Sequence record: MF360958.1
Direction: 5' to 3' (one strand)
DNA: 64,000 nt
How positions within the stretch are numbered: the first letter of the stretch is position 1; each line of letters starts with the position of its first letter. The notes beneath the pieces are model-generated. The model was not told the DNA's origin, searched no databases, and saw nothing but the letters and a program-made list of their open reading frames with translations. Of the stretch, positions 4,624 through 47,113 are shown one piece after another. The translations under genes were made by a program, and so were the position numbers.

Positions 4624-4682
4624 AAGCGCCTATCCTCACCTTCGTTCGGACTTATTCGGCGCTTGATAGCGATCACGTGATC
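4624..4682 (-). promoter_or_regulatory. GC-rich hairpin plus 12-bp palindrome immediately 3' of the CLec-like gene (candidate retrohoming signal)
   Basis: Minus strand AAGCGCC...TCCGAACGAAGGTGAGGA...GGCGCTT; perfect palindrome GATCACGTGATC at 4671-4682 spans the stop codon. Confidence 0.5.
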
Positions 4683-5410
4683 AGTGTTAAGCAGGGACGC
4701 CAGCCAGAATTAGAATTGGAAAAAGACGAGGTAGAGGCAGAGAAGTTGGACAAGGAACCGACACCACGGTAAACACGTCTTGAAGTATCGTAACTAGGGG
4801 TTTCCTGACACCATGTACGTCTACCATCTCCACTACTCACTACAATGTCACTATCCGTATAATTTGCCCAATTTGAACCTTCTTGGTTAGTAGGTGTATC
4901 TTGATGAATACGGTATATTAGGTCATTCCATTCAGATCCTATACTTTCAACAGGGTCATAGTATGAATTACTAGCTCCTTCCGTAGTATTATCTCCATTC
5001 CAACTGGTAGGATCATTACTAGCACCTTTTAGCAAACGTACCTTGAAATTATAACCCGATTTAGCTACCTCTGCATCATTCTCCCCACCATAGACCGCAT
5101 TTACCGCTGATATATCATCCCAAGATATACTATATCGATAAGGTTTCTTAGCTACATATAGGATATCTCCCTTATATGCAAACTTTAGCCATGGTTCATT
5201 ATCCCACTGAGCAGTGCCTGCTGTGAGATTGATTTCACTAGCTAATTCAGGACCAGTGAATAATTCGGAAGCATCGACTTCTCCAAAAAATCCTGCTTGC
5301 ATGTCGCCAGCTATAAGTTCGCTAGGACCGATACCTAGCTCGACTGAAGGACTTGCTTTCTTCACTTTGGTTTGTCCTTGTTGTTTAATATTATTCCATT
5401 TTATGCTCAT
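4673..5410 (-). CDS. Virion structural protein with a C-type-lectin (CLec)-like C-terminus; candidate DGR target
   Basis: FFGEV..EL..G.ELA...LTAGT..WLKF..LYVAKKPYRYSISW pattern of jumbo-phage structural proteins; ends RVYRG...SGWRPCL as CLec-fold variable proteins do; AGGAG RBS. Confidence 0.75.
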   Translation of the reverse strand: MSIKWNNIKQQGQTKVKKASPSVELGIGPSELIAGDMQAGFFGEVDASELFTGPELASEINLTAGTAQWDNEPWLKFAYKGDILYVAKKPYRYSISWDDISAVNAVYGGENDAEVAKSGYNFKVRLLKGASNDPTSWNGDNTTEGASNSYYDPVESIGSEWNDLIYRIHQDTPTNQEGSNWANYTDSDIVVSSGDGRRTWCQETPSYDTSRRVYRGVGSLSNFSASTSSFSNSNSGWRPCLTLIT

Positions 5411-5467
5411 TATAATTTTTCTCCTGTATTGTTCTTTAGTAATTGTTCTAATAATATTTATGTAATT

Positions 5468-7288
5468 TTATTTCTTTTTAATATTACTTTTAGTTAACAT
5501 ATTATCGATACGCTCATTAGCTTCTTCGATTAATGATTTAACGGCTGATTGATAACTTTCATAACTATTTTCACAATACTCAGGAAATTGATTTGAGAAC
5601 CAAAGCATAATCGTTGCATGTTTTACAAACGTTTCAAGATCCGACAGCGCCATACTACTATTCACATCATTATCATTCGGCAAATGAATCTTTCCTTCCT
5701 CAAACATTTGCTTTACTAAACTATTAAAAATAGTTGTGTTTTTTTCATAATCAACAGGACAGTTAACAAGATTATAGTGAGATTTAACCATTTCAGGATA
5801 TTTGTTTTCTAAAAATTCAGCAATTTTAATTTTATTATTCAATTTGGAATTCTTGTATAATCCCTTTTCAGGGAATTTCTCATTTTCTGACCAATCCTTT
5901 AGAATCGAACTTAAACTGTATTTTTCAAGCAATGTTTCTATATAATGCTGTGTTGGAATAACGTTAAGTTTTTTATTTGGAACATCCAACTGATGCTTCA
6001 TTGTTTGTGTTATATATTTCAACGTTTCATTATCCAGTGCGCCATAGTAACCTACGTCATAAATCCCGTAACGTCCGCAACGTCCACAAATTTGCTTAGT
6101 GAGCATATCGCCTAGAACATTAAAGGCATATCCATCATATTTTTTGAAATTATAGAAAATGATATTTTCAATAGGAAGGTTCATACCCATACCAATAGCA
6201 TCTGTTGCAATGAGAACATCTGTATCACCATTGATGAACTTTTCCGCTTGAGACTTACGTACTTCATGGCCCAATGCACCATAAATCATTGAAACCTTAT
6301 AATTCTTTGGTAGTTCCTGTCGCACACGAAAAACATCTTTACGGGAGAATACAACAATTGCACTGTTTGACGGAATATTATTAAAATTATAAGGTTTCTT
6401 AACAGGTTTTATTTTGGATTTTCTTTGAAAATGATGAACTTCAATTTCTTCGCCAAGATCATGAGCAATATGGCGTAAACGATCTTCGTAGTCAGGAGGA
6501 CCAGTTACAATAACATTCTCTGCATCAGCACCAATTAAAGCCTGAACAAAGAACGGTCCCCGATCACGGTCATCAATAAGTTGTACTTCATCAATAACTA
6601 CCGTATCGTAATGATTCTCAGAATTGAAACATTCAATGGTGGATGATGTACATTGTGGTGTTTTACTATTAATAAGCTTTTCTTCACCAGTAATTAGGTT
6701 TGTCTCTATACCTTGAGAATTAAGATAATTATAGTTTTCATATGCAAGTAATCTTAACGGTGCAAGATAAGCCCCTTTAAAACTGTCTGCTAGTTGGCTC
6801 ATTGCATTATAGGTTTTTCCAGAATTGGTTTCTCCTAAATAAGCTATGATTTTTCGTTTACGCTTTCGAGCTTTATAGAAAATATCAGGATAATCTGAAA
6901 TATTACTAAAATATTCTGTTTCATATTTCAAGGATTCTTCATCCAGTCGCTTTCTAATAACACAGGCATAATCTTCTGCGTTCGTTTCAGACATATCTTT
7001 TTCATTAAGCACTGCTTGAATTATATCTTTATCGAGTAATTGGTAATGAGCTAAACATTCTTGGATGAAATTATCAAGGAATTGCTGTTTCTTAAAAATA
7101 CTATTGGTTCTTTGTGTCATCTGTTTCACAAAGCTTTTTGCTTTTTTATTGAAATTTACTTTGATGCGTACTGTTAAATTATTAGTTGTGTAGTCATTTT
7201 GTAAGCCGTTTTCTGTCCATTCGATGTTATTGCTTTTGAGATCTTGAGCTACTTCTGGATATTGTTTAAGTAATTTTTTATAATTCAT
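5468..7288 (-). CDS. SUV3-like superfamily 2 RNA/DNA helicase
   Basis: LGETNSGKTY, YLAPLRLLAYE, LITGEE, DEVQLIDDRDRG, ATDAIGMGMNLPI, QICGRCGR. Confidence 0.9.
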   Translation of the reverse strand: MNYKKLLKQYPEVAQDLKSNNIEWTENGLQNDYTTNNLTVRIKVNFNKKAKSFVKQMTQRTNSIFKKQQFLDNFIQECLAHYQLLDKDIIQAVLNEKDMSETNAEDYACVIRKRLDEESLKYETEYFSNISDYPDIFYKARKRKRKIIAYLGETNSGKTYNAMSQLADSFKGAYLAPLRLLAYENYNYLNSQGIETNLITGEEKLINSKTPQCTSSTIECFNSENHYDTVVIDEVQLIDDRDRGPFFVQALIGADAENVIVTGPPDYEDRLRHIAHDLGEEIEVHHFQRKSKIKPVKKPYNFNNIPSNSAIVVFSRKDVFRVRQELPKNYKVSMIYGALGHEVRKSQAEKFINGDTDVLIATDAIGMGMNLPIENIIFYNFKKYDGYAFNVLGDMLTKQICGRCGRYGIYDVGYYGALDNETLKYITQTMKHQLDVPNKKLNVIPTQHYIETLLEKYSLSSILKDWSENEKFPEKGLYKNSKLNNKIKIAEFLENKYPEMVKSHYNLVNCPVDYEKNTTIFNSLVKQMFEEGKIHLPNDNDVNSSMALSDLETFVKHATIMLWFSNQFPEYCENSYESYQSAVKSLIEEANERIDNMLTKSNIKKK

Positions 7289-21183: not shown

Positions 21184-22368
21184 ATGGCTAATCTATTCGA
21201 AAACCAGAAAGCTTGGGATACCGTTAAACAGGGTCTATCCGAAGGCTTAGAAGGTAAGAAAAAAGAGAATTTCGAGGTTGTCCTTGAAAATACTCGTAAA
21301 CATATGCTGAAAGAATCTGCAACTTTCGGCGCAACTAGTTCAGGCAACATTGCAACACTTAATAAGGTAATTCTACCTATTATGCGTCGTGTTATGCCTA
21401 ACGTAATTGCAAACGAAATTCTGGGTGTTCAACCTCTACCCGGACCAGTAGCACAGATTCACACTATGCGTTATGTATATTCTGAAAACCATGCTGGTGT
21501 AACTCCCGGTACTGAGGCACTATCACCTTTCGAAGTCGCACGTGCTTATTCTGGTAACGGCGATGTAAACGATCCAAAAGCGGCACCAACTGCTAACCTC
21601 GAAGGTCAGCCCGGTAAGCGTCTAGCGGTAAACCTCGTGAAGCAAACTGCTGAAGCGAAAACTCGCCGTCTAAGTGCACGTTGGACCGTTGAAGCAGAGC
21701 AAGATTCTGAAAGTCAATTCGGCCTTGACCTAGAGTCTGAAATCATGGCTGGTCTTGCACAAGAAATTACCGCAGAAATTGACCAAGAGATGCTAGGTCG
21801 CCTACGTAACCTTGCACGTACTGGTGCAACTTACGACATGAGCGATGACAGTTCCTTTACTGGTACACCTACGTTCGTTGGTGATCGTCACGCAGTACTA
21901 GCAACTCTTATGAACCAACAAGCTAACCTCGTTGCTCAGCGCACTCGTCGTGGTCGCGCAAATTGGGCGGTAGTAAGTCCTATGGCTCTAACTATCCTAC
22001 AATCAGCGACTACATCAACCTTCGCGCGTACTACTGAAGGTCCATTCGATGATCCTGACAACCAGAAGCTAGTTGGTACTCTTAACCAAAACATGAAGGT
22101 TTATTCTGATACTTATGCAAGTGAAGATACTCCTGTTCTACTTGGTTACAAAGGTCAAAATGAGTTTGACGCAGGCGCGTACTTCTGCCCCTACGTTCCA
22201 CTAACTGCAACTCAGGTGATGACTGATCCAAACACCTTCGAACAGGTAGTTGGCTTCATGACTCGCTATGCATACGTTGAACTGTCCAACTCTGCAAGTT
22301 CCTTCGGTAACGCAGCGGACTATGTGTCTAAGATTGAAATTCCATCTGATAGTCTCAAGTACATCTAA
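21184..22368 (+). CDS. gp23: Major capsid protein (T4 gp23-like)
   Basis: LPIMRRVMP..IA..I.GVQP, AKTRRLSARWTVEAEQD, EITAEIDQE, RRGRANW, FCPYVPL, F.TRY; LKE cleavage site near the N-terminus. Confidence 0.97.
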   Translation: MANLFENQKAWDTVKQGLSEGLEGKKKENFEVVLENTRKHMLKESATFGATSSGNIATLNKVILPIMRRVMPNVIANEILGVQPLPGPVAQIHTMRYVYSENHAGVTPGTEALSPFEVARAYSGNGDVNDPKAAPTANLEGQPGKRLAVNLVKQTAEAKTRRLSARWTVEAEQDSESQFGLDLESEIMAGLAQEITAEIDQEMLGRLRNLARTGATYDMSDDSSFTGTPTFVGDRHAVLATLMNQQANLVAQRTRRGRANWAVVSPMALTILQSATTSTFARTTEGPFDDPDNQKLVGTLNQNMKVYSDTYASEDTPVLLGYKGQNEFDAGAYFCPYVPLTATQVMTDPNTFEQVVGFMTRYAYVELSNSASSFGNAADYVSKIEIPSDSLKYI

Positions 22369-46192: not shown

Positions 46193-47113
46193 TTAAATTA
46201 ATTTTCGATTCACAATAACTGTGTTGTAAGAAAAAACATTTTTATTTCTTTTTAAAAATAAAATAATATGCGTGATTATATATATTGCTATTATTAAAAT
46301 AGCAATATAGTTGATAACTATAATAATATTATGAATAGTATTTGTTGAATGTTCATATATCATGTGATAGTTTATACTATTTTCAATTAAAACAATAAAA
46401 ACTTTTATGAATATTAACAGAACTAGGTATAATTCAACTATATTCATAATGACTGATAAAGGATTCTTAATACATTTTATGAATGCCTTTCGTAAAAATC
46501 CGACCTTGACGCAAAATTGATTATCCATCATTTGATAGTTATCTTCATGATGAACAATCTCATTCTTTCTTAAAGTTTCAAATCGAATATTATTAAATTT
46601 ATTCTTTGATGTATTATTTGCTAAAATAGTTTCAACAACGTTATTTCGATGTTCACAATAAGAACAAATGTTTTTAATATTATTTTCTTTATGATGAAAT
46701 GTAATACATTCTCTACTATGATTCGTGAAACTATCCTTACGTTGCGAATTTGTTGTAATAGTGTTGGTATAGAGAGCTTTGAAGTTCTCAGGTAAATCTT
46801 CGACTAAACTTTTTATTCTTGGTATAACCGTTTGATTAAAATTTGTATTGAACGTACAAATACTATTGATCAAAGATAGAATCAATACAGGTAGCATTAT
46901 AGAGGGAAAAATACCATCCCAAAATAGATTAAAGGAACCATCTGACACACTATGAGAGATATTTGTGATTATAATGAACACAAGACTGGCTGCAATAGCG
47001 TATAAAAATTTATACCACAGCGATCCATTATAAAGACGAATATTGTCTTTAAGAACATTGGGATTGAAATCTACTTGATTATGTAAGAAACGCTTTATAC
47101 TATCTGGAACCAT
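46193..47113 (-). CDS. Hypothetical membrane protein
   Basis: Two hydrophobic segments near the N-terminus and two near the C-terminus. Confidence 0.7.
   Translation of the reverse strand: MVPDSIKRFLHNQVDFNPNVLKDNIRLYNGSLWYKFLYAIAASLVFIIITNISHSVSDGSFNLFWDGIFPSIMLPVLILSLINSICTFNTNFNQTVIPRIKSLVEDLPENFKALYTNTITTNSQRKDSFTNHSRECITFHHKENNIKNICSYCEHRNNVVETILANNTSKNKFNNIRFETLRKNEIVHHEDNYQMMDNQFCVKVGFLRKAFIKCIKNPLSVIMNIVELYLVLLIFIKVFIVLIENSINYHMIYEHSTNTIHNIIIVINYIAILIIAIYIITHIILFLKRNKNVFSYNTVIVNRKLI

What the first reader, a model, noticed from the sequence alone, without database searches (positions are those of the whole stretch)
4673..4800. Orphan diversity-generating-retroelement (DGR) variable region in a virion lectin-like gene
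Seen: the 29 codons from 4777 to 4691 (CGT GTT TAC CGT GGT GTC GGT TCC TTG TCC AAC TTC TCT GCC TCT ACC TCG TCT TTT TCC AAT TCT AAT TCT GGC TGG CGT CCC TGC) include none ending in A (26 end in T/C, 3 in G) and hold only 8 adenines in 87 nt. The genome is AT-rich and the same gene uses A-ending codons freely upstream. The peptide RVYRG...GWRPCL is the typical end of CLec-fold proteins. Established: DGRs mutate template adenines, mostly at positions 1-2 of AAY codons, leaving NNY-rich, A-poor variable regions at the C-terminus of CLec-fold receptor-binding proteins (Bordetella BPP-1 Mtd). I found no template repeat or reverse transcriptase in these 64 kb. Inference: a jumbo-phage DGR that diversifies a remote, stand-alone target in trans, or the fossil of one. 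The gene also looks GC-richer than its neighbours, as if acquired.
Basis: partly seen in the sequence, partly recalled or inferred. Interest (0 to 1): 0.82.

Follow-up and report, generated by a model that had tools for sequence, protein, structure and literature searches.

The report
Orphan DGR variable regions, jumbo phage
A small virion-type gene of the 440-kb Salicola phage SCTP-2, present in three copies, ends in a stretch that carries the clear footprint of a diversity-generating retroelement, yet the phage genome holds neither the template nor the reverse transcriptase that must have written it.

Summary
In window 4691-4777 (- strand), none of 29 codons ends in A and there are 8 A in 87 nt (P about 1e-5 and 1e-7 against the same gene upstream).

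The window is Salicola phage SCTP-2, and the gene is gp82 (245 aa). I found two paralogues elsewhere in the genome, gp434 and gp486. The three copies share one almost adenine-free scaffold. They differ almost only at positions 1-2 of 11 NNY codons. Nine of these 11 codons align with codons that are AA(N) in the template repeats of 13 complete DGR cassettes (target, Avd, TR, RT) next to homologous genes in uncultured phages (Fisher p = 8e-6). So these are genuine DGR-type variable regions.

No TR, RT or Avd was found anywhere in the 440 kb, nor a matching TR in three public collections.

My best reading (0.55) is that the cassette was lost and left three frozen specificities on a virion protein. 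A donor acting in trans remains possible (0.25). The high GC content is not evidence of acquisition, because the capsid gene is GC-richer still. A 220-kb metagenomic phage contig shows the same orphan, multi-copy state.

The parts
4673..5410 (-). gp82 ORF (245 aa). It is one of three paralogues in Salicola phage SCTP-2. The others are gp434 (record 345633-346373, - strand; L007:24134-24874) and gp486 (record 400059-400799, + strand; L008:29560-30300).
   Evidence: ORF and translation. Annotation. Paralogues at 86% and 83% amino-acid identity. PHROG virion structural protein families. Structural matches to virion structural proteins of phiKZ-like jumbo phages, TM about 0.7.
4691..4777 (-). Variable region core (29 codons). 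Eleven codons vary at positions 1-2 among the three paralogues. Their first bases are at 4771, 4762, 4759, 4747, 4741, 4738, 4735, 4723, 4717, 4711 and 4708. All of them end in C or T.
   Evidence: Nine of the 11 align with codons that are AA(N) in most of 13 canonical template repeats of relatives, and 0 of 17 invariant codons do.
4691..4705 (-). G+C-rich 3' end of the variable region (12 of 15 bases are G or C, in a 30% GC genome). It has one difference in each of gp434 and gp486. It corresponds to the last stretch that VR and TR share in the complete cassette of relative L014, so it is IMH-like.
   Evidence: The role is inferred, not shown.
4671..4682 (-). Perfect 12-nt palindrome overlapping the stop codon. 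It is identical in all three copies.
4624..4664 (-). Conserved inverted repeat downstream of the stop: 7-nt arms at 4658-4664 and 4624-4630, with a 27-nt loop. Homology among the three loci ends just past the distal arm. gp486 has one change inside the distal arm.
   Evidence: 2 of 49 pairwise differences against 26-29% at third codon positions upstream. The folding energy is no better than that of shuffles. A long-loop G+C-rich hairpin sits in the same place in the complete cassette of L014.
5411..5467 (-). Conserved leader shared by the three copies (about 55 nt). It holds an A/T-rich 8-nt box (exact in gp434 and gp486, 7 of 8 in gp82) and a GGAG ribosome-binding site. It abuts the stop codon of gp83.
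   Evidence: The box is not enriched in the window (23 found against 19 expected). Its likeness to a T4-type late promoter is therefore only a lead from my own knowledge.

Best explanation
The tract is the variable region (VR) of a DGR target gene. SCTP-2 carries three copies of this gene. Each is a self-contained cassette: a conserved leader of about 55 nt, a 245-aa ORF, and a conserved 3' block of about 50 nt with inverted repeats. The copies lie at about 67 kb, 346 kb and 400 kb of the genome.

Shown: the copies share one scaffold that is almost free of adenine. They differ at near-saturation level only at positions 1-2 of 11 NNY codons. Those codons are the ones that are AAY in the template repeats of complete DGR cassettes (target, hairpin, Avd, TR, RT) found beside homologous genes in uncultured phages.

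Inferred: the three tracts were written by adenine-directed mutagenic retrohoming from one template, after the gene had been triplicated.

Shown: the genome as deposited holds no TR, no RT and no Avd, not even a remnant.

Inferred, and my commitment: the writing cassette was lost from this lineage. The phage now carries a frozen set of three binding specificities on a small, late-expressed virion protein, which probably binds a surface ligand. Mild decay is already visible in one copy (gp486).
For: - Identity of the window.
- Paralogues and their alignment.
- Pairwise differences: 64-73% at position 1 and 55-64% at position 2 of the 11 variable codons; 0 of 50 at positions 1-2 of the scaffold; 1-3 of 25 at scaffold third positions, against 46-53 of 180 upstream.
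- Nine of 11 variable codons align with majority-AA(N) codons of 13 canonical TRs and 0 of 17 invariant codons do, p = 8e-6.
- The family is a proven DGR target elsewhere. 21 of 83 related loci have an RT within 10 kb, in all but two of them 1-2 kb downstream. 17 have a TR 520-620 nt downstream, 13 of them with 0 non-adenine mismatches and all with 3-17 adenine mismatches. There is an Avd-like ORF, and the RT is 31% identical to the brt reverse transcriptase of Bordetella phage BPP-1.
- Absence in SCTP-2: blastn-short and an adenine-tolerant scan of all ten genome pieces find only the three VRs. tblastn and a profile of 15 family-linked RTs give a best E of 1.7. An Avd profile gives a best E of 0.5. 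SCTP-2 is not among the 141 phage records with such an RT.
- Signs of decay: 5 scaffold third-position differences, 4 of them in gp486, plus a change in the gp486 hairpin arm. Most active relatives have 0 non-adenine mismatches.
- No matching TR in GTDB genomes, JGI metagenomes or IMG/VR.
Against: - The scaffold and the non-coding 3' block are much less diverged than the rest of the genes (about 4-12% against 26-29% at comparable sites). The last rewriting was therefore recent relative to the triplication, or the 3' block is still under selection. That fits continuing use as well as it fits a recent loss.
- No remnant of a cassette was found, although a recent loss might be expected to leave one.
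- The genome of the host strain (Salicola sp. PV4) could not be examined.
- A second jumbo-size contig (220 kb) shows the same multi-copy VRs with no TR on the contig. This hints that the state may be stable rather than accidental.
- The virion location and binding role of the protein are inferred from distant homologues only.
Confidence: 0.55

Rival explanations
1. The DGR is active and supplied in trans. The three VRs are still rewritten, but the TR, Avd and RT sit on another replicon: the host chromosome, a prophage or plasmid, a co-infecting phage or satellite, or a part of the phage genome missing from the record.
For: - The scaffold and 3' inverted-repeat block are strongly conserved against diverged gene bodies.
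- Homology stops exactly after the hairpin, as if that element were part of the functional unit.
- Published work shows that avd, TR and brt function when expressed in trans, and that DGRs act on remote targets (PMC5758913, PMC3240598).
- In a phage of about 150 kb, a VR without a nearby RT (L042) fits the TR of a cassette seen on a related contig, with 3 non-adenine and 12 adenine mismatches.
- A 220-kb contig also carries 4-5 VR paralogues and no TR.
Against: - No TR with this scaffold exists in 185,579 species-representative genomes, the JGI metagenomes or IMG/VR.
- Five scaffold differences among the copies and a damaged hairpin arm in gp486 are not expected if one TR keeps resetting them.
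- A phage that depends on a host-borne writer would lose it on every change of host (argument in PMC5758913).
- The DGR of the only halophile phage with such an RT in the collection, Chromohalobacter phage YPCBV-1, has an unrelated TR.
Confidence: 0.25
2. The alleles were imported. SCTP-2 never had its own cassette. Ready-diversified gene cassettes (leader, ORF, hairpin) were acquired by recombination from related phages that do carry the DGR, possibly more than once.
For: - Each copy is a compact, separately inserted unit with sharp homology ends. gp434 lies alone on its strand between oppositely oriented genes.
- GC is 40-41% against a genome mean of 30%.
- The closest relative, at 68% identity (L093), has the same scaffold with other variable codons and different synonymous sites.
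Against: - The three copies share leader, scaffold and 3' block far more closely with each other than with any outside sequence.
- High GC is also seen in the phage's own capsid gene.
- Three independent imports of the same scaffold are less parsimonious than duplication within the genome.
Confidence: 0.1
3. This is not a DGR footprint. The adenine-poor, NNY-rich tract would simply reflect Ser/Thr/Gly-rich coding, and the paralogue differences would reflect ordinary positive selection on a binding loop.
For: - The scaffold is rich in Ser codons of the TCN type.
- No TR or RT is available to prove the case directly.
Against: - Differences reach saturation at positions 1-2 of 11 codons while the 25 scaffold codons show 0 of 50 differences at positions 1-2.
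- Every variable codon ends in a pyrimidine, so none can be a stop codon.
- The positions coincide with the AAY codons of the relatives' TRs (p = 8e-6).
- Homologues are bona fide DGR targets.
Confidence: 0.04

Closest known systems
Complete DGR cassettes next to homologous genes in uncultured phages (for example loci L014/L015, L017, L053, L062, L064 from IMG/VR)
   Same: - Same protein family (34-51% identity, same C-terminal motif frame).
- Same VR length and register.
- The variable codons fall in the same columns.
- G+C-rich VR end followed by an inverted repeat.
   Different: Those loci carry an Avd-like ORF, a TR 520-620 nt downstream and an RT 1-2 kb downstream. SCTP-2 has none of the three anywhere in its genome.
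Bordetella phage BPP-1 DGR (Mtd, avd, TR, brt), the prototype
   Same: - Adenine-directed variation of AAY codons at the C-terminus of a phage binding protein.
- Some family members carry the Mtd N-terminal domain (Pfam Mtd_N in P0012).
- The relatives' RT is 31% identical to brt.
   Different: - BPP-1 has one target next to its cassette. SCTP-2 has three dispersed targets and no cassette.
- The BPP-1-type hairpin (7-10 bp stem, 4-nt GRNA loop; PMC3240598) is not matched. Here the stem is 7 bp with a 27-nt loop.
- No sequence similarity to any solved structure.
Treponema denticola variable protein (PDB 2y3c) and DGRs with remote targets
   Same: - Best structural match of the predicted gp82 model.
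- That DGR serves several non-adjacent targets (PMC5758913).
   Different: - The structural match is weak (E = 4.7e-3, TM 0.28).
- In Treponema the TR and RT are in the same genome.
- Remote targets more than 100 kb away were thought not to occur in phage DGRs (PMC5758913).
Paralogous virion structural proteins of phiKZ-like jumbo phages (PhiPA3, EL, Noxifer, RSL2, 201phi2-1 and others)
   Same: Same domain by structure (TM 0.6-0.77) and by PHROG family. They are often multi-copy within a genome.
   Different: They are at most 35% identical. No DGR is known in those phages, and I did not examine whether their C-termini vary in the same way.

Membership tests
Diversity-generating retroelement (complete system) | A reverse transcriptase of the DGR clade encoded in the same genome | tested here: not met
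   tblastn with the RT of L011 and L012 gave a best E of 0.037, on a small winged-helix-like ORF. hmmsearch --max with a profile of 15 RTs linked to this target family, run against all six-frame segments of at least 30 aa of the whole genome, gave a best E of 1.7. SCTP-2 is not among the 141 phage records hit by the L014 RT. Neighbours of the three genes have no RT domain.
Diversity-generating retroelement (complete system) | A template repeat: a copy of the VR that differs from it only at TR adenines | tested here: not met
   blastn-short (word size 7) and an ungapped adenine-tolerant scan of all ten genome pieces found only the three VRs. The same scan found TRs in 17 related loci, which serves as a positive control. 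Two IUPAC patterns found nothing in the genome, metagenome or viral collections.
Diversity-generating retroelement (complete system) | A VR at the 3' end of the target ORF, with variation confined to adenine-templated positions (positions 1-2 of AAY codons) and no stop codons possible | tested here: met
   This could be tested only indirectly, through paralogues and the relatives' TRs. Eleven NNY codons vary at positions 1-2, and the scaffold shows 0 of 50 differences at positions 1-2. Nine of the 11 coincide with majority-AA(N) TR codons in 13 relatives.
Diversity-generating retroelement (complete system) | The accessory protein Avd | tested here: not met
   A profile of 10 ORFs lying between VR and TR in relatives gave a best E of 0.5 in SCTP-2. 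One of those ORFs hits the NCBIfam Avd model weakly. Avd is poorly conserved, so a very divergent copy cannot be excluded.
Diversity-generating retroelement (complete system) | A target-recognition element: a G+C-rich VR end (IMH) followed within 4-34 bp by a G+C-rich hairpin with a 7-10 bp stem and a 4-nt GRNA loop (PMC3240598) | tested here: inconclusive
   A G+C-rich end and a conserved 7-bp inverted repeat are present. However, the loop is 27 nt and the folding energy equals that of shuffles. The complete cassette of L014 has a comparable long-loop hairpin.
C-type lectin / formylglycine-generating-enzyme fold of DGR variable proteins | The fold is recognisable by sequence or structure, with the variable residues on one face | tested here: inconclusive
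   No Pfam hit and no PDB sequence hit. The AlphaFold model has pLDDT 83.5. Its best PDB matches are 2y3c (a DGR variable protein), then FGE and PorK chains, but with E >= 4.7e-3 and TM <= 0.31. I could not map the variable residues onto the model.
gp82-like virion protein family (PHROG 1062 / 16120 / 3589) | Full-length sequence homology | tested here: met
   262 homologues at E <= 1e-3. PHROG hits at E = 1.8e-50 and 1.1e-38. Alignment A2 has 22 invariant columns.

The most novel reading that the evidence does not exclude
Jumbo phages may run a distributed, cross-replicon DGR. In this reading, several target genes spread over hundreds of kilobases of the phage genome are rewritten by a template and reverse transcriptase that the phage itself does not carry. 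The writer would sit in the host, a prophage, a satellite or a co-infecting phage, so that the phage's binding repertoire is edited by a partner. The conserved 3' block, the scaffold identity, and the second example on a 220-kb contig with no TR on the contig do not exclude this.
Probability: 0.15. Interest if true: 0.85.

Novelty: new member of a known kind. Interest (0 to 1): 0.55.

Why it matters
- DGR finders start from the reverse transcriptase, so variable regions without an RT are invisible to them. Here paralogue comparison alone exposes the footprint.
- A survey of 224 jumbo phages that included SCTP-2 reported no DGR-type lectin domains in jumbo phages (PMC7824862).
- A large DGR survey expected phage DGR targets to lie close to the RT (PMC5758913).
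- SCTP-2 shows three DGR-written genes up to about 330 kb apart in a cultured phage whose host is also cultured. Whether such repertoires are frozen relics or are still edited from elsewhere can therefore be answered with descriptive data: reads, the host genome and viromes.
- The result also assigns a likely role (a variable binding protein) to a widespread family of jumbo-phage 'virion structural proteins' of unknown function.

Tried and rejected
- A 15-nt match to the VR inside gp516 (L008, about 46390-46404) looked like a possible TR. On reading, it is an isolated chance match inside an ORF with no Pfam hit.
- The weak tblastn hit of the RT on gp474 (E = 0.037) is a small DNA-binding-like ORF, not an RT remnant.
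- The neighbours of the three genes are unrelated to DGRs: a Suv3-like helicase, an AAA kinase-like protein, a PDDEXK nuclease, an HD protein and a CheW-like protein.
- The DGR of Chromohalobacter phage YPCBV-1, a phage of another halophile, was tested as a possible donor. Its TR is unrelated.
- I checked whether the remote copies L042 and L066 are served by the L014 cassette on the same 150-kb contig. They are not (21 and 32 non-adenine mismatches).
- Folding of the 3' block gave no energy signal.
- tRNA and Rfam scans of the window found nothing.
- The A/T-rich 8-nt box in the leader is not enriched in the window.
- I did not build any inferred template, consensus or ancestral sequence. The search patterns only put N where the existing copies differ.

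Full report
**What is at the coordinates.** The window is bases 62001-126000 of Salicola phage SCTP-2 (MF360958.1). This is a 440,001-bp myovirus-type jumbo phage from an Italian solar saltern, with T4-like core genes. Window 4673-5410 on the - strand is gp82, a 245-aa 'hypothetical protein'. None ends in A (14 T, 12 C, 3 G), and there are 8 A in 87 nt. Measured against the same gene upstream (68 of 211 codons end in A; 33.8% A), the probabilities are 1.3e-5 and 8.7e-8.

**Three copies, not one.** A blastn of the region against the phage record reported three places. I fetched the genome in separate pieces (L001-L009) and scanned each piece on its own. This located two paralogues: gp434 (record 345633-346373, - strand) and gp486 (record 400059-400799, + strand). 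They are 86% and 83% identical to gp82 in protein. A tblastn finds exactly three places in the record.

Each copy is a compact unit. Homology starts about 55 nt upstream of the ATG, in a shared leader with a GGAG site and an A/T-rich 8-nt box. It ends just past a conserved inverted repeat about 50 nt after the stop codon. The flanks are unrelated.

**The pattern of differences.**
- In codons 1-180 the copies differ as ordinary paralogues do: 46-53 of 180 third positions, 21-22 first positions and 11-16 second positions per pair.
- In the last 35 codons the picture inverts. Eleven codons differ at 64-73% of first positions and 55-64% of second positions, which is close to the 75% expected for random bases.
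- The other 25 codons show 0 of 50 differences at positions 1-2 and only 1-3 of 25 at position 3.
- The 49 non-coding bases after the stop show 2 differences per pair.
- These contrasts are significant. The pairwise counts are not independent, so the p-values are approximate.
- All variable codons end in C or T, so no combination can give a stop codon.
- Of the 66 bases at positions 1-2 of the variable codons in the three copies, 25 are A (counted).
- In gp82, seven of the eight adenines of the tract lie in variable codons.

This is the design of a DGR variable region: a scaffold without adenines, and AAY codons whose adenines are replaced at random.

**Independent test with relatives.** The protein has more than 260 homologues in public data and no Pfam domain. 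I fetched 79 loci from IMG/VR and several metagenome contigs.
- In 21 of 83 loci an RT lies within 10 kb of the homologue, in all but two of them 1-2 kb downstream.
- In 17 loci my adenine-tolerant scan finds a template repeat 520-620 nt downstream of the VR. Thirteen of them have 0 non-adenine mismatches, and all have 3-17 adenine-to-N changes.
- L014 shows the full order: target, hairpin, Avd-like ORF, TR, RT.
- Its RT is 31% identical to brt of Bordetella phage BPP-1.
- Some members carry the Mtd N-terminal domain.

I aligned the 28-codon VR frame of SCTP-2 with 13 of these TRs. Nine of the 11 SCTP-2 variable codons fall on codons that are AA(N) in most TRs, and none of the 17 invariant codons does (Fisher p = 8e-6). 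The closest outside relative (L093, 68% identity) has the same scaffold with different variable codons and several synonymous scaffold changes. I conclude, with about 0.9 confidence, that the SCTP-2 tracts were written by a DGR.

**The writer is missing.**
- The same adenine-tolerant scan and a word-7 blastn over all genome pieces find only the three VRs. The next-best windows are A-rich runs.
- tblastn with a family-linked RT, and hmmsearch --max with a profile of 15 such RTs against every six-frame segment of at least 30 aa, give nothing better than E = 1.7. One weak tblastn hit is a small unrelated ORF.
- An Avd profile gives E = 0.5 at best.
- The neighbours of the three genes are unrelated to DGRs.
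- Two patterns that carry N wherever the copies differ, and would therefore match a cognate TR, find nothing in 185,579 species-representative genomes, the JGI metagenomes or IMG/VR. The second pattern does recover the known copies among the fetched loci.
- The DGR of a halophile phage, YPCBV-1, has an unrelated TR.

**Relic or still in use.** Points in favour of recent or continuing use:
- The scaffold and the non-coding 3' block are several-fold less diverged than comparable sites upstream.
- Homology ends exactly after the inverted repeat, as if that element belonged to the functional unit.

Points in favour of a relic:
- The copies differ at five scaffold third positions, four of them in gp486.
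- gp486 has a change inside the hairpin arm.
- 13 of 17 cassette-bearing relatives have no non-adenine mismatch at all.
- No donor was found.

I favour loss of the cassette (0.55) over a donor acting in trans (0.25). The host strain's genome and read-level data would decide between them.

**The protein.** AlphaFold with the family alignment gives pLDDT 83.5 and pTM 0.83. The best PDB matches are the DGR-diversified Treponema variable protein 2y3c, then formylglycine-generating enzymes and PorK. The scores are weak (E = 4.7e-3, TM 0.28). The lectin-type fold is therefore plausible but not established. Against predicted viral structures, the model matches virion structural proteins of phiKZ-like jumbo phages with TM 0.6-0.77. 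PHROG families say the same, and tblastn finds the domain in 166 phage records, nearly all of them jumbo phages. A role as a variable, virion-borne binding protein is an inference from these relatives.

**GC content.** The three genes have 40.5-41.3% GC against a genome mean of 30%, which places them in the top 1.4-1.9% of windows. However, the GC-richest window of the genome is the major capsid protein gene (48%). The bias therefore need not mean foreign origin.

**A second case.** The IMG/VR contig 3300037502_002993 (220 kb) carries five paralogues. Four of them share one scaffold and have variable NNY codons. A pattern that would match their TR finds only the four VRs on the whole contig and nowhere else in IMG/VR. 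No RT lies in the roughly 98 kb that I fetched. In another phage of about 150 kb, a copy without a nearby RT (L042) fits the TR of a cassette seen on a related contig. Dispersed targets are thus recurrent in large phages.

**Literature.**
- A comparative study of 224 jumbo phages, which names SCTP-2, reported no DGR-type lectin domains in jumbo phages (PMC7824862).
- A survey of 372 DGRs found remote targets only for non-phage DGRs and expected none in phages. It also cites evidence that avd, TR and brt work in trans (PMC5758913).
- The requirement for a hairpin downstream of the VR is described in PMC3240598.
- I found no paper on RT-less variable regions.

Noticed in passing
L019, L037, L050, L079, L092 (IMGVR_UViG_3300037502_002993, 220 kb): This contig carries five dispersed paralogues of the same family. 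Four share one scaffold with variable NNY codons. No TR lies anywhere on the contig or in IMG/VR, and no RT lies in the roughly 98 kb that I fetched. This is a second orphan multi-copy case.
   Followed up: partly
L011:6001-7886 and L012 (416-kb T4-like metagenomic contig): A short RT (283 aa, RVT_1) lies tail-to-tail with a homologue of gp82, but no TR lies within 6 kb on either side. The same phage type has a second paralogue with a different scaffold (L095).
   Followed up: partly
L042:10625-10708 against L062:11233-11316: A copy without a nearby RT, on a 150-kb phage contig, fits the TR of a cassette on a related contig (3 non-adenine and 12 adenine mismatches). It is a likely remote target inside a large phage genome.
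   Followed up: partly
window 21184-22368: The major capsid protein gene is the GC-richest stretch of the whole genome (48% against a mean of 30%). High GC in this phage therefore goes with a strongly expressed virion gene.
   Followed up: yes
window 5468-7288 (- strand): gp83, directly upstream of gp82, is a Suv3-type DExQ-box helicase with the SUV3 C-terminal domain. This is unusual for a phage. It is annotated as hypothetical.
   Followed up: no
L008:31259-31678 (SCTP-2 gp489, record 401758-402177): A full-length CheW-like domain protein (E = 7.9e-18) is encoded by the phage about 1 kb downstream of gp486.
   Followed up: no
SCTP-2 record 215993-218077, 256428-257321, 429356-429748 (outside the window): Three separate CDSs are annotated as 'terminase large subunit'. 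This could be a split gene or paralogues. I did not examine it.
   Followed up: no
L010:267-5876 and L094:178-6051: In two metagenomic relatives the gp82 homologue follows a beta-propeller protein of 1,870-1,960 aa. This suggests a fibre or adhesin module.
   Followed up: no
window 1-64000: The whole window holds no tRNA gene and no Rfam family at gathering score.
   Followed up: yes
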